64,000 nucleotides of DNA from Salpingoeca rosetta. Taxonomy: Eukaryota > Protista > Choanoflagellata. Positions within the stretch are counted from its first letter, which is position 1, and each line of letters starts with the position of its first letter. The DNA lies in NCBI GenBank assembly GCA_033442325.1, contig JAWQFM010000004.1, forward strand, positions 1,854,926-1,918,925, in the 5' to 3' direction. The notes below the pieces were generated by a model. The model ran no database searches, had not been told where the DNA came from, and worked only from the letters and a program-made list of their open reading frames with translations. The position numbers and the translations under genes were made by a program. This document shows, piece by piece, positions 3,533 to 60,218 of this stretch.

Positions 3533-3564
<32 letters not shown>

Positions 3565-4101
3565 GTCAGTGCCTGTTGTGACGCGTGATGTTGTGCGGTC
3601 GTTGACGGTCGCCTTCTCCGAGCAGCTGTCATCGCTTGCCTGCAAGCATTGTTACGCAGTTGGGGGCGTGACGAGCGATGATGCAACCTGTCGCCCTGCG
3701 ACAACGTGCGACTTTGCAACGGGCACCATCGCAGCTGTCGCTGCAGGTGTTGCTGGGGAGCCCACGCTCGCCATCACCAACAACGGCACCGCCCTCGTGT
3801 CGTGCATGCAGGCATTTGAACGCGGCTGCAACGTGCAGGATCCAAGTGTACCGGGCACACCGACATGCCCGCTTGGATTTCTGCACGTGTGCGGGGTGAC
3901 GCAGCTATCGTACAGCGCCACGTGCAACGCGTTTTCGGATGAGCAGCAGCAGCGTGCGTGCGTTGAGGAGAACACATACACACACTGGATCGAACTCACG
4001 CTCACAGACGTCGCCGGAAACACCGCAACACAGCGCATCGACACCTGGATCTTCGGTGAGCGAATTAGGGTGTGTTGTGGGTGTGTCTATGTGCGCGTGT
4101 G

Positions 4102-4145
<44 letters not shown>

Positions 4146-40100: not shown

Positions 40101-43100
40101 CGCCGCCTGGCTGCTGCCTCCGAGGGCAGCCAGGTTCAGCAGCGACGCGCGGGACGAGCCTGCAAACAGGCCGACGGCGTGGTCGCTCGGCAGCAGGTGG
40201 ATCACACCGGCCTCTTGCACGTGCGGACCGGAGCGGTCGACGCTCGAGCCAACACCGGCGGCGCGCACGCGCGAGCTGTCAATGCCAAGCAGCAGCGACA
40301 CGGAGGCAGACACCTCCGTCGTCGACGCCTGCATGTTGGTGCGGACCAGTGCCGTGATGGTGAACAGCAGCTGCGTCGTCGTGCTTGCCGTGCCATCCGT
40401 TCCAATCACCTGCACCGCTTCCTCACAGGGAGCGCCTCCAGAGATGGTGCGCGAAGCACACACCGGGTTGATGCTCGGCGTGTCGGCGTTGAAGGCCTCG
40501 TTCATATCCACGCTCAAAATGCGCAGCTCGTTCCCGAGCGTCACAGACGCAGTGAACGCGCCAATGCCAGACTCAGACCGCGCATACACGCCAATCTCAA
40601 ACTGCTCGTTCTCGTACAGCCCACGGGCTGGCAGCACAATCCACAAGTCCTCCGCCAGCACGTCCGTGTTGATGTTCACGTTGGACGGCACCAGCAACGC
40701 CGTCGTCTGCGCAGCCACAGCGCCGCCCGTGCCCTTGACACTGCCCGACGCTGTCACCTGCCGTGTCGACGTCGTCAGGAACCACGCTTCCGGCACGGTG
40801 ATGGACAGCATACAGATGCCGTTGAATGGCGCAGCGCTGTTGGCCGTGCACGACGCCGTCTTGCTCAGCGTCAGTGATCCGGACGGCGTGAACCGCACCT
40901 CCACCGTCGCCGGCTGCGTGTGCACCCTGTTCTCGCTATCCAGCACCCGCGCGGCAATGCGCAGCGTACGGTGCCCGCCGTGCTCAAGCACGTCCTGGTA
41001 CACGCGCTCGTCCACAACAAGCAGCTCGAGCTGCGCCGGCGCAGACGCCTCCACAGACACAGACTCCGTGCGCGTGAAGTTGCCCAGGCCAGCAACAACC
41101 TCAAAGCTGTCCCCAATGCTGGTGGAGTACAGCGGGCCCACGCCAAGCGCAAACTGCTGCAGACCGTCATCGGAAGACAGCAGCGTCTGGCCAGCCGCGT
41201 CAAACGGCGCGGCGCCCAGCGTCGAGAACGATGCCCGCTGTGTGTCTGCCAGAAGCACTTGCACCACCGTACGGGACGTCAGGCGCGTCGTGCCTGCGTC
41301 CTGCACAACAATCTCCACCTCAGACTGGCCCGCAGGCAGCGATGTCGCCGGTTGCGCCAGCACAAGCGCGCGCAAGTTCGTGTCGGTCGTCAAGCGCTGC
41401 AGCGTGAACAGGCTGGACACGGGGCCAAACGCAATCGAAAACGTCAGCTGCGCATTCACGCCAATGTCCGCATCCTCTGCGCCAATGTACACCACCGTTG
41501 CGCCAGCATCCGTGCCAGGATCAACGGCGCCTCGGTACGACGAGCGCGTAAACAGCGGGCGGTTGTCGTTGATGTCCTCAACCTCGATGGTCACCGTCAC
41601 GGTGGAGCTGAGCGAGGGAGTGCCAGCGTCTGCAGCCACCACAACAATCTGGTACTCATCCTGTGTCTCGCGGTCCAGCACCCGCTGCGTGCGCAGCTCG
41701 CCCGTTGTCGGGTTCAGCGTAAAGTCGCTCTGCGTTGTCACAATCGCAAGCGTCTGCAGCTGCGCATTCACACCAGCATCCGCATCCGTCACGGTCAGCA
41801 CGCCAACCAGGTCGCTGCCGGTGCCGTTCTCGGCAACAGAGAACGTGATGGAGGCGGCGCCAAACGATGGCGCGTTGTCGTTGATGTCTGTCAGCTGCAC
41901 AGTCACCGCAACAGAGGCGCTCAGGGCCGCACCAGCATCAACAGGCTGATCCGTGACAGTCACGGTGAACGAGTACGAGGCAGATTGCTCGCGATCAAGC
42001 CCGCTTGGCAGCGACAGCTCGCCAGTCACGGCATCAACAGCGAGGCGCGTGTCGTTGCTCGAGTAGCGAAGCACCGCGTTCGGGCCGATGTCTCTGTCCG
42101 TTGCAGCCACAAAACCGAGGGATGCAACAACCGACTCCTCATCCGCGGTGAACACGTAGGATGCACTGTTGAAGACAGGGGCGTTGTCGTTCGCATCGAG
42201 CACGAAGATTGTCACGTTCACAATGCGGTCAAACGTGGAGGAGCTAACGCGCATGGCGAGGTCGTACCGGTCGCGCGTCTCACGATCCAATGGAGCAGCC
42301 AGCTGGAACTGGGCCGTGGTTGGGTCAACGGTGAACAAGGTGTTGCCAGACCCAAACAGGTCGTAGTTGAGCACTGGCACAGACGTTGCACCATCAAACA
42401 CAGCACCGAAACCAACATTCAATGCAAAGTCCTCGGCAACAGAAAGCTCGATGCCCACGTCAAACAGATCACAGAGATCGCTGCGCATGGAGATGTCGAA
42501 GGTGGTGAAGGGGTTGTAGCCGGAGCCGCGGTAGAGGCCGGCACCAAGCGCGCCAACGCTCACATCAAGCAGGCCGCTAAACTTGTACGGCGGCACAGAG
42601 CTGCCGTCAAGGAAAAACTGCCGCGCAACATTCGTCACCCCGTTCACGTCCGTCGTCACAAGCACAAGCGACAGACCAAGGTCCGCAAGCACAAGCTCCG
42701 TGCGCACCCGCACCTCAAACACCCCGTCGCTGCCGTCCACAAGCTCCGCGCGCCAGTACCCGCCCAGGTACGACGCGCGCACACCAGACTCAACCGTAAA
42801 CGGCGCAGCCTCGCCGCGCTCAAACTCAGACGACAAAAACAGCCCCTGCGACGCTACATTCTCGTGCGCAATGTCAAAGTACAGCAGCGTCTGCGCAGCA
42901 TCAGCGGCAACGTCACCCTTCGCCCGCAGCCGCGCCCGGATCGTCAGCGAGCAGTTCGCCTCCGCATCCGTCACATCAAGCACCTCAACGTCGCTCACAA
43001 ACCGCAGCTGCCGGAAGTTCACCTTGGCCAGGTACGACGAGTCGCGCCCGTCAATCACCCCGTTCAGGTCAGCGTCCATCTGCGCCTCCTGCGTCCCGTC

Positions 43101-46100
43101 AGCAAGCAGCGCAGCCTCAAACGCCATACCCTCGGCGTTGCTGAAGCCGGTCGCAGCATACACAATGTACTGGATCGTGAACCGCACATCGCGCACATCG
43201 AAGATGCAGTTGCCATCGGCGTCACCCGTCTCGCGCGCACGTCCAGTCAGCGACAAGCACTGGCTGTCGTCGCACGGCGGGCTGTCGCACGTTGCGCGGC
43301 GCACACGGCGCTCGCCCGCCATCCACGACGTCGCCGACAATCCACTCTCAGCTCCACCCAGCTTCCTGCTGCTGCTACTGCTGCGACGGCGGCGTGCACC
43401 ACCAGACACAAGGAAGTCAAACGTGCCCGCAACAAACGAGCGGCCCTCGCTGCCAATCAGCACGCCATCCAAGTCGGCCATCGTCGTCACGCGCCCGCTC
43501 AGCATCAGCGCCTCTCCGCCACTCACAGTGTTCAGCACGCGGAACCGGATCACAGCAATCGTGTTCAGCCCAGAGATCCCGTTGCCCTCAAGCGCACCGC
43601 CAAACAGCACCTCGCCAGGCGGATCGTCCAGCGTCGGCACAAGCTGCGAGCTCGATGGCCAGTCAGACCCAGCCACCACAGACACAGCCTGCAGCTTGGT
43701 CGCATCATACAGCACCGTCAGGTCAATCGACCCAAGCTGCGTCGTCCCCGTGTTCACGCGCACGTCAACGTCAAACTCAGCCCCAGCGCTCACCGCGCTC
43801 ACCGCGGGCCCGCTCGTCGCGCCAAGGTCGACATCCTCAGCGGCCGGCGCGAGGTTGCAGAAGAACGTCGCCGACCCGCTCACGCCAACATCCGGCTGCG
43901 CAGTGGCAACAATCGTCACCGCCTCCGGGTCGTTCTGCAGCACCGTCACGCGGCCCGTGCTGCTGTCAACGCTCGCCGCGTCCGTGTTGTCCACGCTGAA
44001 GCTCAGCAGGTTCGGCACAGCAACAACACCGCCGCTCACAACGTTCGGGTACTCCGTGCCGTCGTCAAACCGCACGCCCACGCTCACGTCAGATGTCCCA
44101 ACGCCGGCAACCCCGCTCAGCGTGCTCACAAAGTTCACACGCCCGCTCACGCGCGCGCTGTTCAGCACAGCGCTCACAAACACGGGCGTTGTCCCAAGCG
44201 AAAGCCCCAGGTTGCTCGTGCTCGACGCACCCGCAAACGTGGCGCCCACAACCGCGCTGCCCGTCGTCGCAGATCCTGCACGCGACGCAATGCGCCCGCT
44301 CACAGAGATCACGCTGCCGCCAGACAGCACGCTGAACATGGTCAGCCCAGAGGACGACACGTCGCGCGTCGACCCGTCGGTCAGCGTCAGCACAAGGTTG
44401 AGCCGCGCCTGCTGGTACTCGCCCGTGAGCCCAATCGGCCGCAGCTCCGTCACCGCCCGCGACGTCGAGCCCGCGTAGGTCGGGAACGGCGACGCACTCA
44501 CAGTCACATCCTGCACCTGCACAACCGTCACATCCACAGACGCGGTGATGTTGGCGTGTGTAAACGAGACTGAGATAGTGGCCGTTCCGCTCTGTCCAGC
44601 GACAGGCACGACTTGCCGCGACCCGTCCGTGTTCACTTCAAGCGTCACCAAACCTGCAGGCGTGATGTCATACACCGTTCGGGAGTCGTTGGTGCGGTCT
44701 TGTGCGTCCTGGCCATAGATGAGGTCGACCTCAAGCCGAGTGGACGTTGCGACACCAGCGCTTGCGGCGACGCTGCCAGCGTCGGTCAGCGTGGTTGTGC
44801 CCACAGTGATATCTGCGGCGTCTGGAGCAGGAATGGTCACGGTGACAGCGGCAGTGGCCGAGGCAATGACCGTTTCGTTGTTGCACGTTGTTAGCCACCG
44901 CACAGAAACGAGGTCGCCGCTGCCACTGCCAAACGCGACAACGTTGGCGCCTTGCACGCGCACAGAGCCGGTGTTGAGGGACTCCGTCCTGAGCAGAACA
45001 TCTGCATCGTCAAAGCGCAGCGGCATGACTGCAAAGTCAGTGAACTCCGCTGCTGCGTAGATGACACCACTGTCGCCTTCCAGCGCAAACTCCTGCTGCA
45101 GGGAAGCCGTCGCAAGCAAGTTTGCGCCGACACTAATTGTGCCTGGTGCCGACAATTCGAGGGACGTCACCACGTTTGGCATCAGCCGCGAGACGGTGAC
45201 TGGGTCCGACGAAACCGTTACAGGCGTTGAGCCCACAACCTGCGCATCGGGTCGAACAATTTCAAGCAGGGCCTGCCCTGGAGCAGCACCTTCAACCATA
45301 CCATCAGCAACAGTCATCACAGTGGCGTTGCTGGACGAAAACAGGGCCGACACCAGCGAATCCACACGCACTTCCACGTCGCTCTGCGCATCATATGCAA
45401 ATGCAGCTGTGGCAGTGATGAAAGAGCGCTGGTATCGTTGGGCGCAGGCGTTGTTGGGGTCGAGCCAGTCCTGCACAGCGTTCAGCTCCGCATCCTCAAC
45501 CGTCACAGTCACAGGCAACCGCGGTGCCCACACGCGCACAGAAAACACAAAGCTCAGCGCGCCGCCGCCGTACTCAACTGTCACATCAACCTGTGGCGAT
45601 CGCCCGCCCACAGCACTCGTCAAGTCAACAGAGCTGCACCCTGCACCAAGCACAACAGCTTCCGTATCAGACACGCTGCACCCGCTCAGAGAGCCAGTCG
45701 ACAGCGTCCCAACACTGCCAGACCGGTACAGCCCGCGCACAGAGATGCTGCGGCTCACAGTGTCGCCCGTCAGCACAGCCGTGTTCACAAGCTCAGACTC
45801 TGCAACGTGCGCAAACAGCCCCACAACCGCATCCTCAGCAACATAAATGCCGCCAAAGCTTGCCGGCGCCGAGCTCACGCGCGTCAGCCGGTCCTCAAAC
45901 TCCATCGCCCCGTTGCCCGTCGGGAACAGGTCCTCCCCGCGCACGTTCGTCAGCTCCTCCACAACGCCGTCAATGCGCTGCACGGCATCCAGCGTCGCCG
46001 TGCTCAGCACATCAAACTCAATGCGCACGAGGTCCTCTGCGCTCACAGGCTGCGACGACGCCGTCGACGCATCCTGCAGCTGCCCAAACACCGTCCAGTC

Positions 46101-49100
46101 CTGGTCCGTCGTCGCCGTCGTCTGCAGCGAGAACTTGTCCGTGTTCACCGCCGTCACGCTGCGGATCCGCAAGCCAGACCCCGTCGTCACCTGCATCAGG
46201 AACGTGTCTGTCTGGAACCCGGCGTGGCCAGACACTGTGGCCGTCACCCGGTCCCCACGGAACGCCGTCCCAGACGGGATGCTCATGCGCAGCCCCTGCG
46301 ACACGTCGCTAAACTCACGCTGCCGACGCACGCGCACAGTGCCCAGCGACGTGTGCTCGGCTGTCGATTCCCCATTCAAGTACACAAACACCTCCACGCT
46401 CGGGTCCTCGGTCAGCGCAAGCAGCGACGAGTCCGTGAACCACGCCAGCGGCAGGTTGTCTGCCGTCACCGTGCACATACCCGTGCTTGTGCTCGAGCTC
46501 ACCGTGCAGCTTCCCGTCACCTCCGTGTTGCTGATGCCTGCCAGCGTTGCGTCGGGCACAACCCGCACGCGCACCGTGGCCCCGCTCACCCGCACGTTGA
46601 AGGTGCTGTCGCGGACCTGTGCTGCCACTCGGATGCGCCGGCTGCTCGCCCACACCTCCGTGTCCTGCACAGCACCCACGCGCGTCACAGCCGCTTGTCG
46701 AGGGCGCGAGTATGTCACGGAACTGGTCAGCTGCTCACCAAACGCCACTGAGAGATCTCCTTCACGGGTTGTGTCCATCGGTACAAATGCAGTGAGCGAG
46801 TGCTCAAAGACACCACGGATCGGTGATGTGTCCACGATCTCGGTTTCAATTTCTGCGAAGCCCATTCCCGTCACCGCAACGTCTGGCTTAAGACCCATCG
46901 TCGAGACGGTGGAGAGCGTGATGACCGTAAACCCGGTCCTGGGCGGGGTGCCATGGTCGGTGCCCTGCACCAGGATGGAAAAGAGCGATCCCCGGCCCTC
47001 AAGCACCACGGACGTGCGGATGACGCCTGTGTCTGGGTCGATATCAAAGATCTGCGCAACAACCTCATCCACAATCGAAAACGTGACGCGCGCGTTCTCA
47101 CCAGAGTCTGCATCATTGGCCGTGACGTTCGCCACAATGGAGCCAACTGGGAGCAGCGAGGAGATGTGCGGCTCAAAGTCTGCCACAAGAGCAGGCGCGT
47201 TGTCGTTGACATCGAGCACCTGCAACTGCATGGCAAACCTTGCAGACCGAGGCGGCGTTCCGTGGTCCGACGCCACCACGTCAAACGTAATCAACGCTGG
47301 GCCAGCATCATGGTCCAGTGGCTCCGCAACACGAACAACGCCTGTGGTCGCGTTCACGGAGAACTTGTTGGCCACGGACGGATCGCTGAAGTTAGCCAGG
47401 GAGAAGGTGATGCGAGCGTTGTCGCCAATGTCGCCGTCGGTAGCGCTGACGGTTGTCAGCACCGCAACCTGCCGCTCGACAAGAGAGAACTCGTGGTCTG
47501 TGTTCTGAAACACGGGCGTGTGGTCGTTGGCATCCACCACTGCGATGTTCACTGTAAGGTCAGTGGAGAGCGGCGACGCAGAGCGACCAAGCGTCGTGTT
47601 GTATCGTGGCGTGTAGAGGGGGCTACTGTCGCTGGCTCGAAGCGTGATCGTGTACGAATCCACGTCTTCGCGATCCAGAGGCCGCGTTGTGTTGAGAGCA
47701 CCAGTCACGGGGTCAATCGTAAAGATGCTTTCGCTGTTACCCGCGACAATCTCAAAGAGAATGGCCGCGTTGAAATCAACATCGGCGTCTGTGACCGGAA
47801 TGAACGACACCAACGCGCCAGCTGGCAGATTCTCCGTAATGTTCAGCGGCTGGGGCAAATGCTCAAACACAGGGGCGTGCGTGTTCACATCATACACCGT
47901 GACTATCACAGAGGCGAACGAGTGCAGCGGAGACGCAGCCAGGTCCTGCCCGCGCACGGAGATGTTGAGCACAGCCCACTCGCCCTGCAGAGGCACGAAC
48001 GGCTGAGCCAGAACAATTGTGCCGTTCTGCGAAATGTTGAAACGGTTGTCCGGGTTGTTGGCAAGCGTCAGCTCCACAGTCCCGCGAACGCCCGAGTCCG
48101 CATCTGACACGTTCACCACCGCCACAACCGAGCCCACAGCAAGCGTATCAGGAAGCAGTGCCTCATACCCATCGGGGGTAAACTGAGGCGCATTGTCGTT
48201 GTCGTCCATGACGGAAATCATCACAGATGCAGTCGAGGACAGCGGCACAGGTATTCCCAAGTCGGTCGCAGTCACAGTCAGTGCGTACGACATCGTGGTC
48301 TCATAGTCGAGTGGCTGCTGAATGCTGATGGTTCCCAGCATTGCGTCAATGGAAAACCGCCCTTCCTCGTTACCGCCAGTGATGGAGTATCTCACTTCAC
48401 CACCAACGCCGGTGTCCGCATCAGAGGCAATCAGCTGCGTGAGCACCTGTCCAACAGGCGTCAGCTCAGGCACGGAAATCACGACAGTGTCGCGCACGAA
48501 CACAGGTGCATTGTCGTTGGCGTCCGAGATGCTCAGCGTCAGCGTGAAGGTGATTTCCTGCTCGCTCACGCCGTCCACAGGAACAACGTTGCGCGCCGAA
48601 ACGGTGATGAGGTAGTTGTTGACCACTGTGCGATCAAAAGTCATGGCGTTCAGCAGCTCGCCAGAAGTGGTGTTCAACGCAAGGGCATCGGGAGCGGCAA
48701 CAGGCACAGAACCACCCACGGGCGTAGCAAACACAGACAAGAGGCGGAAGGTGACCTCCGAGTACACATCCGTGTCAGCGTCGTCAGTCTCAAACGTGTA
48801 CACAACAGAGCCCATCGGCGCATTCTCAGGAACTTCCGCGCTTGCTGCGCTCACGAAGAACGGCAGGTTGTCGTTCTCGTCTGTGATCGTAATCACCACA
48901 AACGCCGTCGCGTTGAACGTGCCATCCGTGACAGTTGCTGTCAAATTGTATGAAGGCACCGACTCCCGGTCTGTGGGAAGGGAGGACGTTGTCACAACCC
49001 CCGTTGATGGATCAACAGAAAAGTGTTCGGACCCATTGCCAGACAAGGCGTAGGTGAACGAGGTGCTGTCAATGTCATCGACGGACAGCTGAACAATAAA

Positions 49101-52100
49101 AGCACCAGCTGCCGAGTTCTCCGCGACTGATCCGGTGAAGACTGGCATGGCAAAGAAGACTGGGATGTCGTTCACGTTGACGACGACAATGTCGACAACG
49201 GACGTCGCGCTGCGCTGCGTGCTCACGCCCTGATCGCTCGCCTCAACCACGAGCCGGTACGACGTGTTCCGCTCATAGTCAAGCGCGCCCTCAAGCACAA
49301 TCTCGCCGCTCGTGGCGTTGATTGAAAACAGGCCGCTCGAGTTGTCAGACACAAGCCGGTACTCGAGCGTCCCGCTCGCAGCAGCAACCGCAATCCCGCC
49401 GTACTCAGACCCAGGCACATACCCGAGATCCTGGTCCGTCGCGTTCACGTCAACAACAACCATCCCAACCTCCGCCGTCTCAGACACAGGCACCGTCAGT
49501 GACGCAGGCGCAAACACGGGCGAGAAGAAGTTGAAGCACGTGCCCGTTCCGCGCGTGTTGTCAAACTTCATGTTCGGGCTGTACCCGCCCGACAGCGAGA
49601 TGGTCACGTCGTCAAACGCCAGCGACAGCGCGCTCCCGTAGTCGTACGGCGGTAGCGGGCTGCCAAACACAGCCAGCGTGCGCGCAGGCAGCGTGTTCAG
49701 CTCCCCATCAAGCGTCTTCTGGATCGGGCTCAGCCCAATGCCGCTCAGCTCAATCGGCGTGTACAGCGACACCTGGTACAGCCCGCCCCCGATGCTCGCA
49801 GCCTTCACAATGCCGCCAAAGTGCCCGCTGCCCTTGTTCGTCACAACAACCTCGCCCACAGCGGCCGTGCTCGCGTCAAACGCGGCCTGGAACGCGCTTC
49901 CGCCCTGCGCAGACGTCGCAGCAAAGTCAAAGTAAACCTCCGTCTGCCCGTTCGTGTCAGCCGTGTCACCGGCCTTGAGCACCTCCGCAATCACTGTCAG
50001 CTGGCACCCGTCCGTGTCCTCAGCAACAGTCGTCACGCTCACGTTGCGCACAAACCGCAGCTGCCGGAAGTTGATGCGCGCAAGCACAGACGTGTCCGTC
50101 GGGTCGATCACCCCGTTCAGGTCAACGTCCATCGCATCCAGCTGGAAGTCCTGCAGCGCCGCCTTGATGTTCCCACCGCGCACAGTCGAGAACCCGAAGA
50201 TCTCCTCAGTCAGATACACCTGCAGGAACGCAATGTCGTCCAGGTCAAAGATGCAGTCGCCGTTGGTGTCACCGCTCTGTCGCCGCCCGCCGCACTGTGC
50301 CTCCGTGCACGGCGCCGTCGCGCTGCACTTGGTCGTCACTACGTCCGACGCCCGCCGCACGCGCGCGCTCTCGCTCGCATCGTACCCGGCCAGCCCACCG
50401 CTGCTGCTGCGGCGGCGACGCGCCGTGTCCGTTCGCAGATCGCCAGAAATGAACGCGCGCGGCGACGTCCCAGACGCAGCCGGGCTGCCAATGTCGGTCA
50501 CCGATCCGTCGTTGGCCAGCGTCGTGCCCATCTTCTTCGTCACACCGTACAGCTCAATCACGCCCGTCCCGACAACCTGGAACTGGATCGTCGCCAGGTG
50601 GTACGACGTCGACGCAATCCCGTCCTCGGTCACGCCGCCCAGCAGAATCGTCCCGACAGGGTCGTTCAGCGTCTTCACAAACGTGCCACCGGGCCACGTC
50701 GCCCCAGGCACAACGTCCACCGGCTCAACAATCGATGCGTCGTAGTACACCTCAAGGTCAACGCCACCCAGCACCAGCGATCCCGTGTTCACATACACGT
50801 TCACATTGCGTGTGCCGCTGCCCGTCGCAGGCGCAACAGGAACACCAGTCTTGGAGCCAAGGTCAACGTCGCCAATGGCAGGCGCAAGGTTGCACGCAAA
50901 CGCCGTGCTCCCGCTCACCCCGCCCGCATCCACCGCCGTCGCCGTCACGGTCACCGTCTCGTGGTGGTTCGCAAGCAGCGTCACCTCGCCAGTCGTGCTG
51001 TCCACAGACGCCACCGCGGTGTTGTCCAGGCTGAACGTCACCAGGTTGTCAAACTGCCGGTTGCCCGAGCTGTCAAACACAGACTCGTACCGCGTCCCGT
51101 CGTCAAACTCAACCCCGAGGCGCACAAACGCGCTGCTCGTGCCGCTCTGGCCGCTCAGCGTGCCAACAAACGACACCCGTCCAGTCTGCCGGTTCTCGTT
51201 CAGGATGGCGCTCACAAGCACAGGCGTCGACGTCAGCGTCACCGTCACCGTGTTGTCTGCCTCAAGCCCGGCGTGCACAGCAGAGATGACAACGCTGCCG
51301 CTCGTGCTCGCGCCGTCCCGCGCAACACGCCGCCCGCTCAGCGCCAGCCCCACGCCGCCCACAATGCTGTAGCTCGTCGATCCAGATGGGCTCACGTCGC
51401 GCGTCACGCCGTCTGTGCCCACGAGCTTCAGCTCCAGCTCAGCCTCCTGGTACTCGCCCGTTCCGGAGAGCGCGTTCAGCTCGTCAGCAATGTCGCTCGC
51501 CGACCCAGCATACGAGGGATACGGCCGCGGCACAAGCGTCGCCGTCGACACACCCACAACCTGCACGCTCACCGTCGCCGTCACGCCAACGTGCGTGAAC
51601 GACACGCCGAGCACGCCCGTGCCCGTCAGCCCAGCCGTGTTCGCAACCACAAGCGGCACAGGGCCACTGCGGTCAATCGTGAACAAGCCGTTGCTCTGGC
51701 TCAGGTCATACACCGTGCGGTTGTCGTTGCTGCGGTCAAGCCGCGTGCTGCCGTATACGAGCTCCACAGTCACCGCCGTCGACGTCGGGAACACGTTCGT
51801 GTCCGCAAACGGGCTCGGCAGCCCAGGCGCGCTCGGGTACGTCACCTTCGCGTTCGCCACAGTCATGCTCACAGAGTCGGGGTCCACCAGCGACACGTTC
51901 ACAAAAGCCGTGCCCTGCGCAAGCACCCCAAATCCGCAGCCCGTCGACGGCTCCCACTGCAGCCGCACCAGGTCGCCCGCGCCGTTGCCAAACGCAGCAA
52001 CCTTGTTGGTGTCCGTCACAACAACCGTCGACCGCGCCTTGCTCGTCAGCGAGAGCCCCATCGCCGGCGTCACCTCAAGGCTCGCGCCATCAGAGAACGT

Positions 52101-55100
52101 CACAGCCGCAAACACGTCCGCTTCCTCCTCTTCAACATCAAGCTCCTGCAGCAGCGTCAGCCGCGCCGTCTGCTCGCTGTCCGTCGAAAACGATGTGCTG
52201 GACAGCGTCAGCTCCGCGCTCGTCAGCGCAAGCCCGCGCACGTAGCTCGCGTTCACAAACCCGCCGCCAACAGCCACTTCCACAAAGCCAGCAAGCCGCC
52301 CGCCCGCGTTCAGCGTCACGTTGGCAACGCCGGCTCCCACGCCGCGCACCATCAGCCCGTCCACGCTCGCAACGCCGCCGTCGCTCACGCTCAGGTGCCC
52401 GTCCACAACGTCGTTCACCACAACCTGCTTCGCAGGCCCGCTCGGCGAGTACCGATATGTCGCAACAGCCTTCACCCGCCCGCGCTGGTACTCCTGCGCA
52501 CACGTGCCGCTCGTCATCCAGCCGTACACAGGCGACAGCTGTGCGTCGTTCAGGCCCAGCGAAATCGGAAGCTCCGGCGCCCACACGCGCGCCCGCACAA
52601 CCGCCTGCTCCCCGCTGCTGACGTGCTGCACAGTCACAGCCACAAGCCCGCTGCCCTGCGTCGTCGTCGCTGCGCGAAGCTCCAGCCGGTTGCAGCTGCT
52701 CCCCACAGCAACCACAGACGTGTCGTCGCTGCTGCAGCTCAGCCCGCTCGAAAGCGTCGACAGCGCGCCCTGCCGGTTCAGCTGCTTCGTCGTCAGCGTC
52801 ACCGTCTGCGTCGACCCGTCCAGCACAGCCGTGTTCACAAGCTCTGCCTGCGCCAGGTAGCTGAACACAGCCGTCACAGGGTTCGAGGCAACATACACCG
52901 TGCCCGTGCCCTCGTGCTCACCAAGCCGGTCAACCACGCGCCCAGGCACAGGGCTCAGCACAATCGGCTCGTTCAGGTTGCGCAGGAACTTGATCTGCAC
53001 CGTCAGGCTGTGCGTCGTGTCCAGCGCCGCGCTCGATCGCGCGCGCATCGCAACACGAACCAGCTCCTGCGCGGCAACCTCAACTGTCGGCAGCCCGGCC
53101 TCGTTGTCGTGGTTCGCAGACAACCCAGCGGACAGCCCGCCGTCCGTCACAAGCGGCGCCGCCCGCCACGTCCCAGAGTCAAAGTTGATGCTCAGAATCT
53201 CAAGGTCGCTGCTCACGTCAAACTGCAGCGTAAACGCCGTCACAGGCAGCGTCGCGTCACCATACACAACGGCCTCAAACGTCTCCCCAACAAACACAGG
53301 CCGCAGCGGCATCTGCACCTGCACATCGTTGTTCGTCGGGCTGCTGCTCGCAGTGATGCCAAACGTCGGCTGGTACCGCAGCGTCACATCCCCGGCAGAC
53401 GTCAGCCCCGTCCGCTCATCGCTGAACCCGTACTGCACCTGCACAACCTGGTCCCCAGACACAACTGTGTCAGAGAACCACGACGCCGGCACCGTCACAG
53501 ACGCCGTGCACATCCCCGTCGCCGTGCCCACCTTGCACGACCCGACCAGGTTCGACGCGCCAGCCGCAGACGCAAGCTCGCTCGTCGGAACAACGACAAT
53601 CTTCACATACGTGTTCAACTCAACACGGCTGCTCCACAGCTCGTCCCACACCTGCAGCACCGCCTTCACAGTCCGGTCGCCGTCCGCGTACAGCTCGGTG
53701 AACGCCAGCGTCGCCGACACCTGCGTTGCACTGCGCCGCTGCGTCGAGTACGACACGCTGTTCGACGTCAGCGCGCTCCCCAGGTACGCACGTACACTGC
53801 CGCTGCTCCCAACAGCAGCGTTGTTGAACAGGGTGAGCTTCTCATCAAACTCGAGCGTTCCGACGAGAGCTGTGGAGCCCATGGGATAGCCGACCGCAGT
53901 TGTTGAGAACGAAATTGGCATGGGATCTGTGACGAAGATTGTGAGCATGACGGAGCTTGACTTGGCATTGAGCAAGCTTCCTTCGTCCTGCACCCACACG
54001 GCAAGCTCATACAGGGTTTGGGTTTCCCGCGAGAGCTGGCCGTTCACCCGCAGCTCGCCCGTGGTTTCGTCCAGGCTGAAGGCGCCATCTGGCGTTGTCG
54101 ATGCGCCGCCCTGGAAGTAGAAGCGGAAGCCCTGGTTGCAGCTGTCTTGATCTGTTGCATTGAACCGCACCACCACTGTGCCAACGACAGAGTCCTCGGG
54201 AACAAACTGAAAGTAGCTGTCCTGCGAGAACTGTGGGGTGTAGACGTTATCGTCCAGGATGGTCACGAGCACCGACGCATCTGCGCTTCGGCGGTAGCCG
54301 TTGAAGTACCTGCACCCCTGACGACAGATGCTGCTTGTGCACAAGGTCTCGCACTGGGCGAGCGTCGATGAGGTGTTGCCGTGCACGCAGCCTTGCTTGC
54401 ACCCGTCAAACGACTCGCCCGTGCTGAGAAACAGCAGGTGGCAGCGGTCGCTGCACTCGCTGACGGTGCCGTTCGGGTTATCCGTGACACGCACCCCAAA
54501 CGTGACTGTGTCAACGTTGTCGGTACAGAACTGCCCGTTTGTTGTGACAACGCCAGTGTCTGGGTCGATGTTGAAGCGGTCCGAGTCTGGGCCGTCGAGG
54601 ACGGAGAAGGTGAGGCGTGCGTTCTCGCCGGCATCCAGGTCAAACGCGCTGCCCACAAGCACGTTGTCTGTGACTGGGTCGCGGGTTTCCGTGAACCCAA
54701 ACCCGTATGCGGTCGACTTTGTAAACTGGGGGGTTTCGTCGTTCATGTCGCCAACCTGCACGAGGACGCGGGTGGTGGAGGAGAGCTGGGGGTGGCCGCT
54801 GTCCGAAGCACGCACGTACACGTTGTACTGGGGAACGGTGAGGGTCTCGCGGTCCAGCACATCTGCAGTGAGGAGAAGGCCCTGTGTTGGTTCGATCAGG
54901 AAAGGGCTGCTTCCAACAATGGAGTAGGTGACGGTGTGCTGGGCCGGGTTGCCACGATCCTGGTCCGTTGCGTTGACTTGAACAAAGGCAATGTTGAGCA
55001 GGTCGTTCTCGTACACCTGTGCGGTGTAGAGGTCCTTCTCAAACACCGGCGGGAACTCGTTCACGCCAAACACAGTCACAATGACGTGGGCCACAGAGGA

Positions 55101-58100
55101 CAGTGGCGGAGAGCCGTTGTCCTCCGCGACAAGCGTGACGTTGAAGGACGAGTACTGTTCACGGTCAATTGTGCGCTGGAGCTCAAAGCGCAGGTCCGTG
55201 GTGAGCTTGAACTTGCGGGGGCTCACGTCGCCACCTGCAATGACAACGCTCACGTCGGAGTTGTTGCCGCTGTCGGCATCGGTCACCTCAATCTGGGCAA
55301 GCAGCGAGTTTGCTGTCTTGTTCTCAAAGATGTCCACGTAGTACGTGTCCTGGGAGAAAATGGGGCGGTTGTCGTTGATGTCGTTGATGTTGATGGTGGT
55401 CGTGGCCATCTGCATCCTGGACGGCGTGCCGTGGTCCCGTGCAACAATGACCAGCGTGAGCTCATGGAGCTGCTCGTAGTCAAACCCGGTGGCGTTGGCG
55501 ATGTACAGCTCGCCCGTCGCGTTGTTGATGTCCAACAGAACGTGTCCGCCTGGCCCGCTGTTGCCACTCTGAATGCTGTAGGTGACGAGCGAGTTTGGCG
55601 TGTTTGGCTCATCAGCGTCTGTGGTATTGTACGTGGCAACGACGGTGCCCTCCGGCGTGTGCTCATCGACGCTGAGCTCAGCGAAGGGGGCCACAAAGGT
55701 GGGTGTGTTGTCGTTGACGTCGACCAAGTTCACGGTGACTTGCGTGAAGTTGGAGAGGCCGCCGCCGTCGGTCACGTTGACGTCCAGCGTGAACGAGCGG
55801 ACAACCTCAAAGTCAAGGGCTGTTTGGTCCATGGTGGTGAGGATGCCCGTGGTTGCGTCGAGATGGAACGGGGTGCCCAGGTCAGACGTGAGCGGATCGA
55901 TCAGGGTGAAGGTGAGGCGGCCAAAGCTGCCAGAGTCTGCGTCCGTGGCGTTGATCTGGGCGATGATGGTGCCACCCAGCGTGTTTTCGCGAATGGTGCG
56001 CGTGACGGGCGGGTGCAGCAGCTGTGGGTAGTTGTCGTTTTCATCCAGCACAATGACGTCGACGCGGGCTGTGGAGTTCATGGGTGGCACACCGTGATCG
56101 ATTGCCATGACGGTGATGTTGTAGCTGGTGGTGCGCTCATAATCCAGCGGCAGACTGCTAACAAGGGACATGCCTTCAATGACAAAGCCGCCAGCCTCGT
56201 TGCCACCAACAATGCTCAGTGTGTAGTTTCCGTTGTCACCGGAGTCTGCGTCGGAGACGTTGAAGGTGACAATCGACGTGTGCGGCGCCATGTACTCAGA
56301 CACGCGACGAATGTGCAGTGGCTGCGCAAACAACGGCGCGTTGTCATTTTCGTCTGTGATCCACACGTACACGGGATGGGTGATGTTGAAGCCGCCGTCA
56401 GACACCTGCACGGTGTACGTGTACTCCTGAACGAGCTCGTAGTCGATACTGGTGGCGAGAGTGATGACACCTGTGCTCGGGTTGATGGAGAAGGGCATGC
56501 TCGATTCCAGGATGGAGTATGTCAGCGTTGCGAACATTGGGTGAATGTCGGGGTCCGTGGCTGAAATGTTGAGGATGGTGGAGGAAACCGGAGTGGCCTC
56601 CGAAATGGTGGCATTGAACAGGACGAAGGGATCAAAGGCCGGCGTCTCGTTGATGTCCGTGATGTTGACGAGCACGGTGGTGGTGACGTTGAAGGCGCCA
56701 GGGTTGACACCGTTGTCAGACACAACAACCTCAAGCGTGTACGATGTCACGCTCTCATAGTCAAGCTCAGCCTTCATCACAACAACGTGGCCAGTCCCGT
56801 TGATGGAAAACAAGCCGTTCACATTCGTCGCAGGTGTGATCGTGTACGTCAGCACGTTGCTCGGCGCTGTCACATCTGCATCGCTCGCAAACACGCGGGC
56901 CGCAACATGACCGGCACCAGCAGACTCAAGCACCTCATACACATCAACGTTGTTGATCACAGGCGTCTCGTCGTTCAGATCCTGGATGTGCACCGTAACA
57001 ACAAGGTCTGCGCCCTCAGACGACAGGCTGGGGCTTCCGCCGTCGGTCGCCCGAATCACAATCGTCTCCGTCGCGCTGTACTGCTCAGCATCCAGTGCCA
57101 CCAGCGACACCAGGTTGCCGTTGCCGTCGAGCCCAAACGCGCTCGGGGCGGTGGTGTTGTGGATGCTCAGTGACACCACGGCGTTGTCGCCGCTGTCTGC
57201 GTCAGACACGTTCACCGGCACGCTGAAGCTGCCGCCATCAAGCACCGTCGTCTCGTACGCCGTCTCCGCAAACACAGGCGGGTTGTCATTGATATCTGTG
57301 ATTGTGACTGTGACGACGGCACTGTCCTGCTCGAAAAAGTCGCGAAGCGGGAAGACGATGACGCTGACCTCGTAGTAGTGTGTGCCTGGATAGGGGAAGT
57401 TTGTGGCCTCGTAGTCCAGCGGGGCGTTGATGGAGAACACGCCCGTGATGGCGTTAACGGCAAAGGCCTTTTCGCTTGCCGGGCCCGGGTTACCACCGGT
57501 GATGGAGAAGATGTTGTCGACAGAACCCTGCTCAATGTCAGCGTCGGTGATGGTGAAGGTGACGATGGCAGTGCCGACGGTGGCGTTCTCCGGGACGGTC
57601 ATGGCCCAGCGCGGCTGCGTGAAGAAGGGCGGCAAGTCGTCGACGTTTGTGATGTTCACGTAGACGGCCACCTCGCTGCTGCGCGGGATGTCTGGGTGGT
57701 TGTCGGTGGCGTTGACGACAAACACGTGCACGGTGGTGGTTTCGGCGTCAAAGGACTGCCGGGTGGTGATGGCGCCCGTGGCAGCGTTGATGGCAAAGGG
57801 GACGCTGAGGGGATCACGGATGCGGTAGGTGACCAGGGCCCCCTCGTCCATGTCGATGGCCAGGACAGTGCCGACGGCCGTCCCGGAAGCGGCGTTCTCC
57901 TCCACCTGGAAGATGTACGGCGAAGCGGTGAAGGTGGGCGCGTCCTTGTTGGGGACGCCCTTCAGGACGGAGATGGTGAGGTTGGCCGTGCCCATGAGCG
58001 GCGGCGTGCCTTCGTCGTACGCAAGCAGCTCCACGTGATGCTGCGGCACAAGGGTGCTGTTGAGGGTGCCGTTGAGGACAACAAGGCCCGTGTCGTCGAT

Positions 58101-59656
58101 GGTGAAGAGGGACTCGCTGGTGGCGCCGTCGAGCGGCCGCAGCGCATAGTGGACCACGGCGTTGCTGCCCAGATCGGCGTCGGTGGCCGACACCTGGATG
58201 ATCTCGTAGCCGGGCTGCTTGAGCTCGCTCAGCTCCGCCTCGTACGCCTTGCTTGCAAACTTGGGGCGGTTGTCGTTGACGTCGCGCAGCGTCAGCACAA
58301 GGGTGATCTGCGTGCTGAGTGGCGGGGTGCCCGTGTCCGAGGCGACAAACGTGACGGAGACGGTGGACTGGCTCTCGCGGTCCAGCACACCCACAACGTG
58401 CACGCGGCCCGTCTGGTCGACGTCGAGCGGCGCGCCCGCCGTCTGCGTGGAGAAGACGATGTTGGAGTTCTGGGCGGACACGTCCGCGTCCGTGACGTTC
58501 CACTTGAAGATGGTGGTGTCGTACGCCAGGTCCTCCGGCACCTCGATGCTGCGTGTTGTGGGCCCGTCGTAGGTTGGCCGCTCGTCGTTGGCGTCTGTGA
58601 CGTGCACGGTCACCGTGGTGTTGGTGGTGAAGGGCCCGTCAAACGCCTGCAGCACAAACGTGTACGAGGTTGGCGGCGTCTCTGCGTCGAGCGCGGCCTT
58701 GAGCGACACGGTGCCGTCGTTGGCCACCTGGAACACGTCCTCCGAGTGGTTGACAATGGCAAAGCTGGTGACGGGCACGGTGTCGATGTCCGTGGGCGCA
58801 AGCTGGAACAGCGTCTGGCCAACCGTGGCTGCCTCGGAGACGTTGAAGGAGTACGAGTCCTGGTCGAACACGGGCGGGTTGTCGTTGACGTCCAGCAGGG
58901 TGATGACGACGGTGGCATTGGACCTGAGCGAGTTGTCCTGCCGATCGACCGCCTCCAGCATGATGGTGTAGGTGGTGGGCGGCGTGTCGTAGTCGAGCGT
59001 GGCCGTCTGGCTCAGGATGAGCTCCGTGTCGCTCTTCAGCTCAAAGAGGCCCTCCTCGTTTCCGCCAATGATGAACGTGTCGTAGTCGCGGTACACGGGC
59101 CCGTCGGCGTCGCTGATGGAGACGTTAACGATGGACGTGCCCGGGGGTGCGTCTTCCCGCACCTGCGCCGGGTAGGATGCCTGCGAAAACAGGGGCCCGT
59201 TGTCGTTGATGTCGGTGATGGCCACGACAGTCTGACAGGCGATAAACGAGGTTGTTGAGCCAATGTACATGTAGAACACGGGCTCGCGGTCTGGCGAGGG
59301 CCGGAGCTGCTCGGCGTCCAGCTTGAGTCGCGTGTAGACCTTACCCGAGTTTGGATCGGGTATCTCCAGGATGCCACCCGCATTGTCGTGCGAGACAATT
59401 TCATAGTCGTTGTTGGTGAATCCAGATACAAAGAAGTACAGGCTGGAGCCAAAGGCTTCATACACCAGCGCCCCTGGCTCTTGCTCCTCCTCCACATTGA
59501 CCAGATAGGGGCAGGAAATTTGCCCTGCGTGTGTGTGTTTGGTGAAGGGAGAAGGGGGATTGTGTGTGTGGCGAAGGGGGAGGGGGCATTGTGTGAGCGT
59601 GTGCGTGTGTGTGTGGTGAAGGGGAGGGGGGTTGTGAGTGTGAGTGTGAGTGTGTG

Positions 59657-59689
<33 letters not shown>

Positions 59690-59695
59690 TGTGTG

Positions 59696-59756
<61 letters not shown>

Positions 59757-60218
59757 GTGTTGTGCTGAATTGGCAGCTGGAGGTGAACGGCGCACTGGAC
59801 CACTTTCGAGATGCACATGCAGCCGGAACAACAGCCGAACCAAACAGGCTGAAGAACCAGCTCACCAGTGATCCACACGTCCTCCCCCCCCCCCACCAAC
59901 ACGTCCCCCACACTTGCAAAACGTACCTTGTGCCGTTGTTGAGAGAAAGGCAAGTGTGAAGAAGATGGTCAGGGTGAGGAGTGTCCTCGCCGCGTTGCGC
60001 TGGAACCAGGAAGGCGGCTGCGCCCGGGGACGACGACGACAACGCCGATGATGACTGTCATGGTGTTGTCGTTGTCGGTGTGTGCACGGTTTTTCCACTG
60101 CCGGCACTGCTGGTGCTGGTGCCGGTGCCGGTGCCAGAGTTGCTGTTCTGTGCTGCGCGTGCACGCAGGAACCAGCGCCGAAGAAGCTGTGGTCATCTGT
60201 GTGTTGGTGCCAAGGCAT
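37155..60218 (-). CDS. Giant cadherin (~7,550 aa), coherin/TMEM132-like: ~31 EC repeats, 3 TMEM132-like modules, 2 cohesin-dockerin cassettes, TM, cytoplasmic tail
   Basis: Exon 1 60218-59927 ends in a signal-like stretch TLLTLTIFFTLAFLSTTAQG. A phase-1 GT-AG intron (59926-59525) joins it to a 22.37-kb exon 59524-37155. Repeated DxNDNxPxF, LDRE/LDYE and AxDxD cadherin motifs; TM at ~37911-37970. The start codon choice is less certain than the rest. Confidence 0.93.

What the first reader, a model, noticed from the sequence alone, without database searches (positions are those of the whole stretch)
50067..50830. Cohesin - double furin site - dockerin cassette: a candidate cleave-and-reassemble, cellulosome-like adhesion system
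Seen: a cohesin-like domain (NVNVYVNTGSLVLGGVDLEVYYDASIVEPVDVVPG...GTILLGG...LATIQFQV, ~50440-50830) is followed by RRRR (50409-50420), a 15-aa Ser/Gly spacer and RVRR (50352-50363). A short Cys-rich segment then leads into a dockerin-like duplicated Ca loop (GDTNGDCIFDLDD...LQVYL...DVDLNGVIDPTD...LARI, 50067-50273), with D/N at loop positions 1, 3, 5, 9 and 12 in both loops. Established: cohesin-dockerin is the Ca-dependent, high-affinity, mechanically strong pair of bacterial cellulosomes; R-x-[KR]-R is the furin/kexin consensus; cohesin-bearing cadherins (coherins) are known in choanoflagellates. Inference: the precursor is cut precisely between the two binding partners, the spacer is removed, and the pieces are rejoined non-covalently by a releasable, exchangeable clasp. 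The cohesin has no Cys, so a disulfide tether across the cut is not obvious. I am not aware of this processing logic having been described, but cannot check the literature.
Basis: partly seen in the sequence, partly recalled or inferred. Interest (0 to 1): 0.92.

Follow-up and report, generated by a model that had tools for sequence, protein, structure and literature searches.

The report
Cut-and-clasp cohesin-dockerin joint in giant cadherin
A giant adhesion protein of a choanoflagellate-like protist carries a cohesin and a dockerin of the kind that holds bacterial cellulosomes together. They are separated by two conserved protease-cutting sites, and sequence evolution indicates that the two modules grip each other, so the protein is probably cut and then held together by a calcium-dependent clasp.

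Summary
The finding lies in one uninterrupted 7562-aa reading frame (minus strand, 37155-59843), a cadherin with TMEM132-like modules.

- **Modules.** The cohesin passes Pfam's cut-off. This copy of the dockerin falls just under it, but the family profile hits about 25 solved dockerins, and an AF2 model (pLDDT 94) superposes on them (Z up to 9.3, rmsd 1.7-1.9 A).
- **Cutting sites.** RRRR, a 15-aa spacer and RVRR sit exactly where stated. The whole cassette recurs at 42999-43883 and about 20 times in the genome. In 164 cassettes from 124 diverged proteins, including one from Monosiga brevicollis, both basic sites are kept in about 95%. R-x-[KR]-R is 119 times denser there than elsewhere, while the spacer varies freely.
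- **Enzyme.** The genome encodes kexin/furin-type convertases.
- **Binding.** A complex model passes its controls (0.73 against 0.13). Independently, the strongest covarying residue pair in the whole alignment bridges the predicted interface (cohesin G94 with dockerin F95).

Best reading: the connecting peptide is excised and a same-cassette cohesin-dockerin clasp holds the pieces. Cleavage, calcium dependence and partner exchange remain untested.

The scan noted the same design on other pieces of this genome. I found no paper describing it.

The parts
37155..59843 (-). Uninterrupted 7562-aa reading frame: giant cadherin with about 28 cadherin repeats, three TMEM132-like modules, two cohesin-dockerin cassettes, one transmembrane helix (37911-37967) and a cytoplasmic tail. 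It has no Met or signal peptide at its 5' end, so the true first exon is probably upstream.
   Evidence: stranded RNA reads cover 48001-53000 without splice joints
50433..50918 (-). Cohesin module of cassette 1 (aa 2976-3137)
   Evidence: Pfam PF00963 at 26.4-29.2 bits, cut-off 24.1; the family profile hits only solved cohesins, best 4ums_A at 1.5e-5
50409..50420 (-). Polybasic site 1, RRRR followed by S (aa 3142-3145), four residues after the last cohesin strand
   Evidence: [KR]R is kept at this position in 157/164 homologous cassettes, and the full R-x-[KR]-R in 86
50364..50408 (-). 15-aa Ser/Gly/Ala spacer (aa 3146-3160), the presumed excised connecting peptide
   Evidence: Variable in length (2-77 aa, median 23) and in sequence across cassettes
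50352..50363 (-). Polybasic site 2, RVRR followed by A (aa 3161-3164)
   Evidence: [KR]R kept in 156/164 cassettes, and the full R-x-[KR]-R in 121
50274..50351 (-). Cys-rich N-terminal cap of the dockerin fragment (aa 3165-3190; C9, C15, C20)
   Evidence: The number of Cys here (3, 1 or 0) tracks the presence of the loop-1 Cys (GDxNGDC), which implies disulfides that staple the cap to the dockerin. It is structured in the AF2 model: pLDDT is 89 from residue 11.
50058..50273 (-). Dockerin module (aa 3191-3262): two calcium-binding loops and two main helices, with an insert of about 10-15 aa between them
   Evidence: fold match to 4fl4_A (Z 9.3, rmsd 1.9 A, 66 of 68 residues), 3ul4_B (Z 8.9) and 2ccl_B (Z 8.6, 32% identity)
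49518..50057 (-). Beta-sandwich domain that follows the dockerin and is modelled with it as one rigid unit (aa 3263-3442)
   Evidence: AF2 pLDDT 94.2, pTM 0.90; only generic Ig/FN3-like fold matches, Z 5-6; no Pfam family
43416..43883 (-). Cohesin module of cassette 2 (aa 5321-5476)
   Evidence: Pfam PF00963 at 43.7 bits; internal duplication aa 1922-3697 ~ 4266-6029, 33% identity
43296..43394 (-). Cassette 2 linker: RRRR (43383-43394), 25-aa spacer, RVRR (43296-43307)
42999..43295 (-). Cassette 2 Cys-rich cap and dockerin (aa 5517-5615)

Best explanation
The region is one of two 'cut-and-clasp' joints in a giant cadherin of the coherin type.

Proposed sequence of events:
1. In the endoplasmic reticulum the cohesin and the dockerin of one cassette, tethered by a short flexible linker, bind each other through the dockerin's two helices. 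The dockerin's two EF-hand-like loops hold calcium.
2. In the late secretory pathway a kexin/furin-type convertase cuts after RRRR and after RVRR, and the variable connecting peptide is lost.
3. The mature protein is then a chain of three large pieces (aa 1-3145, 3165-5487 and 5517 to the end, the last with the membrane anchor). Only the cohesin-dockerin contacts hold the pieces together.

Such a joint could act as a calcium- and force-sensitive break point or release point in the ectodomain.

Shown here: both folds, conservation of the sites, presence of the enzyme genes, transcription, a predicted interface, and covariation across that interface. Inferred: that cutting happens, when it happens, that binding depends on calcium, and what the joint is for.
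For: 1. **Modules.** The cohesin is above Pfam's cut-off, and its profile hits only solved cohesins. The dockerin profile hits about 25 solved dockerins at E<=5e-3. 26 of 50 members hit Pfam Dockerin_1. The AF2 model (pLDDT 94.2) superposes on nine dockerin chains at Z 9.3-6.5. D28, D39, D75 and D86, which are positions 1 and 12 of each calcium loop, are invariant in 50 sequences.
2. **Sites.** The cassette is found about 20 times in this genome and in 737 proteins of a 1.84-billion-protein library, one of them from Monosiga brevicollis. In 164 cassettes, [KR]R is kept at site 1 in 157 and at site 2 in 156. Matched random windows of the same proteins hold it in 4.7-6.6%. R-x-[KR]-R is kept in 86 and 121 cassettes, against 0.4-0.6% in random windows, and is 119 times denser in the linkers. 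The spacer between the sites varies from 2 to 77 aa.
3. **Enzyme.** Peptidase_S8 followed by a P_proprotein domain lies on contig C1 (180.7 and 74 bits), and a second such gene lies on C9.
4. **Binding.** The complex model scores ipSAE 0.73 against a best control of 0.13. That mark was reached by 51 of 78 solved complexes and 2 of 108 mismatched pairs. The three runs agree in at least 93% of contacts, and the partner's pLDDT is at least 76.
5. **Independent of any structure model.** Among 22,020 column pairs in 174 cassettes, the strongest covariation is cohesin 94 with dockerin 95. G pairs with F in 108 of 120 cassettes; cohesins with A/S/T/V/L at 94 pair with small residues and almost never with F. 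Ranks 3 and 7 are also pairs across the interface (131 with 38, 81 with 91). 15 of the top 50 inter-domain pairs lie in the predicted interface, against 1.8 expected (p=1.6e-10).
6. **Transcription.** Stranded RNA reads cover the linker without a splice joint.
Against: - There is no direct evidence of cleavage. Trypsin-based proteomics could not show it anyway, because trypsin cuts at the same arginines.
- Site 1 is only a dibasic KR in about 40% of cassettes, and 7-8 of 164 lack a basic pair at one site. Paralogue L008 has no site 1.
- The complex score may reflect the model's memory of solved cohesin-dockerin complexes.
- The test on phylogenetically independent contrasts for G94/F95 is underpowered: 4-5 of 6 go the same way and none the other way, median p 0.125.
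- Interface residues are no more conserved than the rest. That fits co-diversification but also fits weak constraint.
- The dockerin is modelled as rigidly packed on the following beta-sandwich. That domain was absent from the complex job, so a steric clash was not excluded.
- This copy's own Dockerin_1 score is below Pfam's cut-off.
Confidence: 0.65

Rival explanations
1. Cut and release. The convertase cuts free the N-terminal pieces, which are shed into the matrix. Their cohesins and dockerins then dock onto other molecules, including head-to-tail joining of the middle fragment (dockerin at its N-terminus, cohesin at its C-terminus), to build a cellulosome-like extracellular network.
For: The sites are conserved. 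The genome has about 20 cassettes in many giant proteins. The two cassettes of this protein are identical at three of the four strongest covarying positions (G94/F95, V81/A91, D54/N94) and differ only at 131/38, so cross-pairing is not excluded.
Against: Covariation is between the cohesin and the dockerin of the same cassette, which is what obligate same-cassette partners would show. Interface residues diverge between paralogues in a matched way.
Confidence: 0.15
2. Clasp without cutting. The cohesin and dockerin bind within the intact chain as a folding or stiffening device. The basic clusters serve another purpose, such as binding sulfated glycans or acting as targets of a different extracellular protease.
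For: The binding evidence does not depend on cleavage. Some cassettes have only a minimal KR.
Against: Two basic clusters at fixed positions flank a spacer free to vary in length and sequence. Arg is kept at the P1 and P4 positions and small or polar residues follow the cut. This is the signature of an excised connecting peptide, not of a charge patch. Convertase genes are present.
Confidence: 0.1
3. The two modules are inherited structural domains, perhaps acquired together from a bacterial cohesin+dockerin protein, that no longer bind each other. The high complex score is memory of solved complexes.
For: Small bacterial proteins carrying both modules are the nearest feature-space neighbours. 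The tool itself warns about memory.
Against: The strongest covariation signal lies across the predicted interface, with matching residue sizes. The calcium-ligand positions are invariant.
Confidence: 0.07

Closest known systems
Bacterial cellulosome type I cohesin-dockerin pairs (e.g. Clostridium thermocellum CipA cohesin with Xyn10B dockerin, PDB 1OHZ / 2CCL)
   Same: Same two folds. The duplicated calcium-binding loops have D/N at positions 1, 3, 5, 9 and 12. The dockerin helices contact the cohesin.
   Different: This one is eukaryotic. Both partners sit in one polypeptide as same-cassette partners, separated by convertase sites. The dockerin carries a disulfide-stapled N-terminal cap and an insert of about 10-15 aa between its helices. 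After cutting, load would pass out of the dockerin's C-terminus and the cohesin's N-terminus, the reverse of the usual bacterial arrangement (inference from domain order).
[quoted passage not shown] 2012, as cited in PMC6030884)
   Same: Cadherin repeats plus a Pfam cohesin domain and the five-domain TMEM132 architecture; this protein fits that description.
   Different: The papers I could search describe the cohesin only. PMC6030884 notes that dockerin homologues are not detectable in vertebrates. None that I found mentions a partner dockerin in the same chain or convertase sites between them. The two defining papers are not held in the library.
Furin-cleaved receptors held together non-covalently: Notch S1 heterodimer, FAT1 cadherin, LRP1 (from my own knowledge, not checked here)
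   Same: Cleavage at R-x-[KR]-R in the secretory pathway, after which the two parts of the ectodomain stay associated without a covalent bond. In Notch the association depends on calcium.
   Different: Those are cut once, inside or next to a dedicated fold. Here two cuts excise a spacer between two separate binding modules of bacterial type.
GAIN and SEA autoproteolytic domains of adhesion GPCRs and mucins (own knowledge)
   Same: The ectodomain is broken in the secretory pathway yet stays assembled; these are proposed mechanical break points.
   Different: They cut themselves within one fold; no convertase and no separate receptor-ligand module pair.
Proinsulin C-peptide excision (own knowledge)
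   Same: Two basic sites flank a poorly conserved connecting peptide. The peptide tethers two parts during folding and is then removed.
   Different: Insulin chains are held by disulfides; here they are held by a cohesin-dockerin contact.

Membership tests
Cohesin domain (Pfam PF00963) | Sequence match above the curated cut-off | tested here: met
   26.4-29.2 bits against 24.1 for cassette 1, and 43.7 bits for cassette 2; the profile hits solved cohesins only
Cohesin domain (Pfam PF00963) | Nine-stranded jelly-roll fold | not tested
   The single-sequence AF2 run failed (pLDDT 32). In the complex job the chain had pLDDT 73-78, but no fold comparison was run.
Dockerin type I (Pfam PF00404) | Sequence match above the curated cut-off | tested here: inconclusive
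   This copy scores 16-19.8 bits against 22.9. 26 of 50 family members hit at E<0.01, best 5e-8. The family profile hits 1ohz_B at 6e-7 and 4fl4_A at 5.8e-8.
Dockerin type I (Pfam PF00404) | Duplicated EF-hand-like calcium loops with acidic or amide residues at positions 1, 3, 5, 9 and 12 | tested here: met
   DTNGDCIFDLDD and DVDLNGVIDPTD; positions 1 and 12 of both loops are invariant in 50 sequences
Dockerin type I (Pfam PF00404) | Dockerin fold | tested here: met
   Z 9.3, 8.9 and 8.6 at rmsd 1.7-1.9 A over 62-66 residues, full-length, to 4fl4_A, 3ul4_B and 2ccl_B; the top nine rows are all dockerins
Dockerin type I (Pfam PF00404) | Calcium-dependent binding to a cohesin | not testable with these tools
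   Only a prediction and covariation are available
Proprotein-convertase (kexin/furin) substrate | R-x-[KR]-R, or at least [KR]R, in an exposed segment of a secretory protein | tested here: met
   RRRR followed by S and RVRR followed by A lie between folded modules. The residues after site 2 have pLDDT below 50. The sites are conserved in about 95% of 164 cassettes.
Proprotein-convertase (kexin/furin) substrate | A convertase is present in the organism | tested here: met
   Peptidase_S8 plus P_proprotein on contigs C1 and C9
Proprotein-convertase (kexin/furin) substrate | Cleavage observed | not testable with these tools
   Needs protein work
Coherin cadherins | Cadherin repeats together with a cohesin domain in one transmembrane protein | tested here: met
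   About 28 cadherin stretches, two Pfam cohesins and a transmembrane helix at aa 7293-7311
TMEM132 architecture | Conserved region, cohesin-like domain and three Ig domains in the same order | tested here: met
   Pfam TMEM132 2nd to 6th domains in order, three times in the protein. These hits are parts of a larger protein, so it is not a TMEM132 orthologue.

The most novel reading that the evidence does not exclude
The roughly 20 cassettes of this genome form a set of partly cross-reactive cohesin-dockerin clasps. Once the spacers are excised, fragments can swap partners or join head to tail, because the middle fragment has a dockerin at one end and a cohesin at the other. This would give a eukaryote a calcium-dependent, cellulosome-like, re-wirable extracellular scaffold. 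The same joint also serves as the cleave-and-hold device in non-cadherin receptors of this lineage.
Probability: 0.15. Interest if true: 0.92.

Novelty: new variant of a known kind. Interest (0 to 1): 0.78.

Why it matters
Cohesin-dockerin is one of the strongest known protein-protein contacts and has been treated as a bacterial device for building cellulosomes.

[quoted passage not shown] It is repeated in hundreds of proteins and sits next to the TMEM132 architecture that animals kept.

- If it is cut and held as proposed, it is a third route, besides autoproteolytic GAIN/SEA domains and the Notch-type furin heterodimer, to an ectodomain that is broken yet assembled.
- It would bear on how premetazoan adhesion receptors sense force or release their ectodomains.
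- The cassette is small, and the prediction is directly testable with recombinant modules.

Tried and rejected
- **Single-sequence AF2 of the cassette:** useless (pLDDT 32).
- **Foldseek of the dockerin plus beta-sandwich model against the PDB:** nothing at E<=0.001. The exhaustive VIA-align search was needed to see the dockerin.
- **Disulfide across the cut:** considered, because the dockerin-side fragment has an odd number of Cys up to C116 and the cohesin edge has one Cys. Rejected, because the FACNL Cys and C116 do not co-occur, while the cap Cys count tracks the loop-1 Cys. C116 more likely pairs with C272, which is present in only 23 of 48 sequences, so this is a weak inference.
- **Spacer as an in-frame intron:** rejected. 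It is 45 nt long, and RNA reads cross it with no joint.
- **Nichols 2012 and Peer 2009:** not held in the library, so I cannot say whether they already list dockerins in choanoflagellate proteins.
- **Literature searches pairing dockerin with cadherin, Monosiga, brevicollis, Salpingoeca or furin:** nothing relevant.
- **Independent-contrast test of G94/F95:** right direction but not significant.
- **Other basic motifs in the protein** (aa 4504, 7198, 7312, 7517): not part of a cassette.
Full report
**What is there**

The finding lies inside a single uninterrupted reading frame of 7562 codons on the minus strand (37155-59843). Pfam finds about 28 cadherin repeats and three runs of the TMEM132 second-to-sixth domains, and a Cohesin domain in the second half; the first-half cohesin reached the cut-off only when scanned on its own. 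A transmembrane helix lies at aa 7293-7311 and is followed by a cytoplasmic tail. A block of about 1775 aa (aa 1922-3697) is duplicated at aa 4266-6029 with 33% identity. A third, partial copy (aa 6175-6881) holds only the TMEM132-like part. The window belongs to a 55.4-Mb genome in 68 contigs. One homologue is a Monosiga brevicollis protein. The protein fits the published description of choanoflagellate 'coherin' cadherins, as summarised in PMC6030884.

**The observation**

- cohesin, aa 2976-3137;
- RRRR, aa 3142-3145 (window 50409-50420);
- the 15-aa spacer SSSGGLAGYDASESA;
- RVRR, aa 3161-3164 (50352-50363);
- a Cys-rich segment, aa 3165-3190;
- a dockerin-like module, aa 3191-3262, with acidic or amide residues at loop positions 1, 3, 5, 9 and 12 of both loops.

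The cohesin passes Pfam's cut-off (26.4-29.2 bits against 24.1). This copy's dockerin does not (16-19.8 bits against 22.9). R-x-[KR]-R occurs only eight times in the whole protein, and four of these are the two cassette linkers.

**Are the modules real?**

I collected relatives with a profile of the two copies in this window. The search found 737 proteins at E<=0.001 and 128 at E<=1e-30 in a library of 1.84 billion representatives.
- A 50-member profile of the dockerin region hits about 25 solved dockerins at E<=5e-3 (8x39 at 1.9e-8, 4fl4_A at 5.8e-8, 2ccl_B at 4.1e-7, 1ohz_B at 6.2e-7). Calmodulin-type EF-hands score far worse.
- 26 of the 50 members hit Pfam Dockerin_1 on their own.
- Positions 1 and 12 of both calcium loops are invariant.
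- An AF2 model of aa 3165-3442, built on that alignment, is very confident (pLDDT 94.2, pTM 0.90).
- Its residues 24-103 superpose on solved dockerins over their full length: 4fl4_A (Z 9.3, rmsd 1.9 A, 66 residues), 3ul4_B (Z 8.9, 1.7 A) and 2ccl_B (Z 8.6, 1.8 A, 32% identity). The nine best rows are all dockerins taken from cohesin-dockerin complexes.
- The rest of the model is a generic beta-sandwich (Z 5-6).
- The cohesin profile hits only solved cohesins.

**Are the basic sites more than chance?**

The genome holds about 20 further cassettes in giant reading frames on nine contigs. In their alignment, RRRR follows the cohesin in all usable paralogues but one (L008). R-x-R-R precedes the Cys-rich cap in all. 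The stretch between them ranges from nothing to about 50 aa, with no conserved sequence.

In 164 near-complete cassettes from 124 representative proteins (clusters at 50% identity):

| | Site 1 | Site 2 | Random windows of the same proteins |
|---|---|---|---|
| [KR]R kept | 157 | 156 | 4.7-6.6% |
| Full R-x-[KR]-R kept | 86 | 121 | 0.4-0.6% |

The motif is 119 times denser in the linkers than elsewhere (210 per 9483 residues against 66 per 353,714). The residue after the cut is mostly S, D or A at site 1 and A, S or Q at site 2. The spacer has a median of 23 aa and a range of 2-77. Two fixed basic sites around a free-running spacer are the signature of an excised connecting peptide.

The enzyme is available. 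A Peptidase_S8 domain (180.7 bits) is followed 680 nt downstream, on the same strand, by a convertase P domain (74 bits) on contig C1. A second such gene lies on C9.

The gene is transcribed. Stranded RNA reads of three runs cover 48001-53000 on the expected strand, including the linker, with no splice joint.

**Do the two modules bind each other?**

A complex prediction of the cohesin (aa 2976-3137) and the dockerin fragment (aa 3165-3268), with two calcium ions, scored 0.73. The best of three controls scored 0.13. That mark was reached by 51 of 78 solved complexes and 2 of 108 mismatched pairs. The runs agree in at least 93% of their contacts, and the partner's pLDDT is at least 76. The contacts use both dockerin helices (residues 36-48 and 87-97).

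Like complexes have been solved, so this pass could come from the model's memory. I therefore looked for evidence that owes nothing to a structure model. I computed corrected mutual information over 174 non-redundant cassettes, each cohesin paired with the dockerin of its own cassette.
- After removing nearly invariant columns, the strongest of all 22,020 column pairs, within or between domains, is cohesin 94 with dockerin 95.
- With G at cohesin 94, the dockerin has F in 108 of 120 cassettes. With A, S, T, V or L there, the dockerin has L, V, A, S, T or I and almost never F. This is a size-matched pair.
- Ranks 3 and 7 overall are also inter-domain pairs inside the predicted interface (131 with 38, and 81 with 91). 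The pair 81 with 91 and the pair 54 with 94 are among the contacts the predictor listed with least error.
- Of the top 10, 20 and 50 inter-domain pairs, 5, 7 and 15 lie in the predicted interface, against 0.4, 0.7 and 1.8 expected (p = 1.4e-5, 4.5e-6 and 1.6e-10).
- A test on phylogenetically independent contrasts goes the right way but is underpowered: 4-5 of 6 contrasts the same way, none opposite, median p 0.125.

Taken together, the cohesin and the dockerin of the same cassette most likely touch each other through the modelled interface.

- The Cys-rich segment is a cap on the dockerin. Its Cys count (3, 1 or 0) tracks the presence of the Cys in loop 1 (GDxNGDC), so it is stapled to the dockerin by one or two disulfides.
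It does not co-occur with the nearly invariant C116 of the following beta-sandwich, so a disulfide across the cut is not indicated.
- The cassette always follows a TMEM132-like module. It also occurs in reading frames where no cadherin repeat was detected, one of them with TNFR/ephrin-receptor-like repeats. It is therefore a portable joint rather than a cadherin feature.

**Mechanism proposed**

The linker tethers the two modules so that they pair within the chain while folding. A kexin/furin-type convertase then removes the connecting peptide. The mature protein is a chain of three pieces held by two calcium-dependent clasps.

The purpose is inferred. One option is a break point or release point that responds to force or calcium, by analogy with Notch S1, FAT1, GAIN and SEA (from my own knowledge). 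After cutting, load would leave the cohesin through its N-terminus and the dockerin through its C-terminus, where it is fused to a rigid beta-sandwich. This is the reverse of the usual bacterial arrangement.

**Rivals**

- Release of the fragments and docking between molecules, including head-to-tail joining of the middle fragment, is not excluded. The two cassettes of this protein share three of the four strongest specificity pairs. The same-cassette covariation speaks for the clasp as the primary state.
- A clasp without cleavage would not explain the pattern of the sites.
- Relic modules that no longer bind would not explain the covariation.

**Weak points**

- Cleavage has not been observed.
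- About 5% of cassettes lack one site.
- The complex model omitted the beta-sandwich, so a clash was not excluded.
- Interface residues are no more conserved than the rest.

**Novelty**

In the searchable literature I found nothing on a dockerin partner or on convertase sites in coherins. PMC6030884 states only that dockerin homologues are not detectable in vertebrates. The two key older papers are not held, so prior mention of the dockerin module itself cannot be ruled out.

The scan has noted the same design on other pieces of this genome. Those notes are not independent evidence.

I rate it a new variant of a known kind: a cleaved-and-held ectodomain with a new, bacterial-type clasp.

Noticed in passing
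window 42999-43883 (-): A second complete cassette in the same protein: cohesin, RRRR, 25-aa spacer, RVRR, Cys cap, dockerin. It is 41% identical to the first over the aligned cassette, and both basic sites are kept exactly.
   Followed up: yes
window 39201-41321 (-): A third, partial copy of the repeat unit (aa 6175-6881) that holds only the TMEM132-like module and has no cohesin-dockerin cassette after it.
   Followed up: partly
window 38241-38252 (-): A further R-x-R-R motif (RARR followed by A, aa 7198-7201) about 95 aa outside the transmembrane helix. It could be a membrane-proximal convertase site. Its conservation was not examined.
   Followed up: no
window 59595-59753 (-): The 5' end of the open frame reads through a (CA)n microsatellite (translated as THTHTH...). 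It has no Met or signal peptide before the first cadherin repeat, so the true start is probably in an upstream exon.
   Followed up: no
L025 (G000:C7:526000-535999) and L026 (G000:C12:44000-53999): Paralogous cassettes sit after TMEM132-like domains in reading frames where no cadherin repeat was detected. L026 also has TNFR and ephrin-receptor-like Cys-rich repeats. The joint is therefore not tied to cadherins.
   Followed up: partly
window 49950-50918 (-), protein atlas: The nearest clusters by language-model features are small (about 220 aa) bacterial proteins that carry both a cohesin and a dockerin (Chloroflexota, Planctomycetota, Minisyncoccota, Bacillota). This hints that the pair may have entered this lineage as one unit.
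   Followed up: no
window 51756, 51906, 52632 and others: The RNA reads differ from the window at a few single bases in all covering reads (e.g. 51756 T>C in 12 of 12). This most likely reflects a strain difference between the RNA source and the assembly.
   Followed up: no
G000:C1:1687184-1688833 (+) and G000:C9:1062812-1066019 (+): Two kexin/furin-type convertase genes (subtilase domain followed by the convertase P domain), candidates for the processing enzyme.
   Followed up: partly
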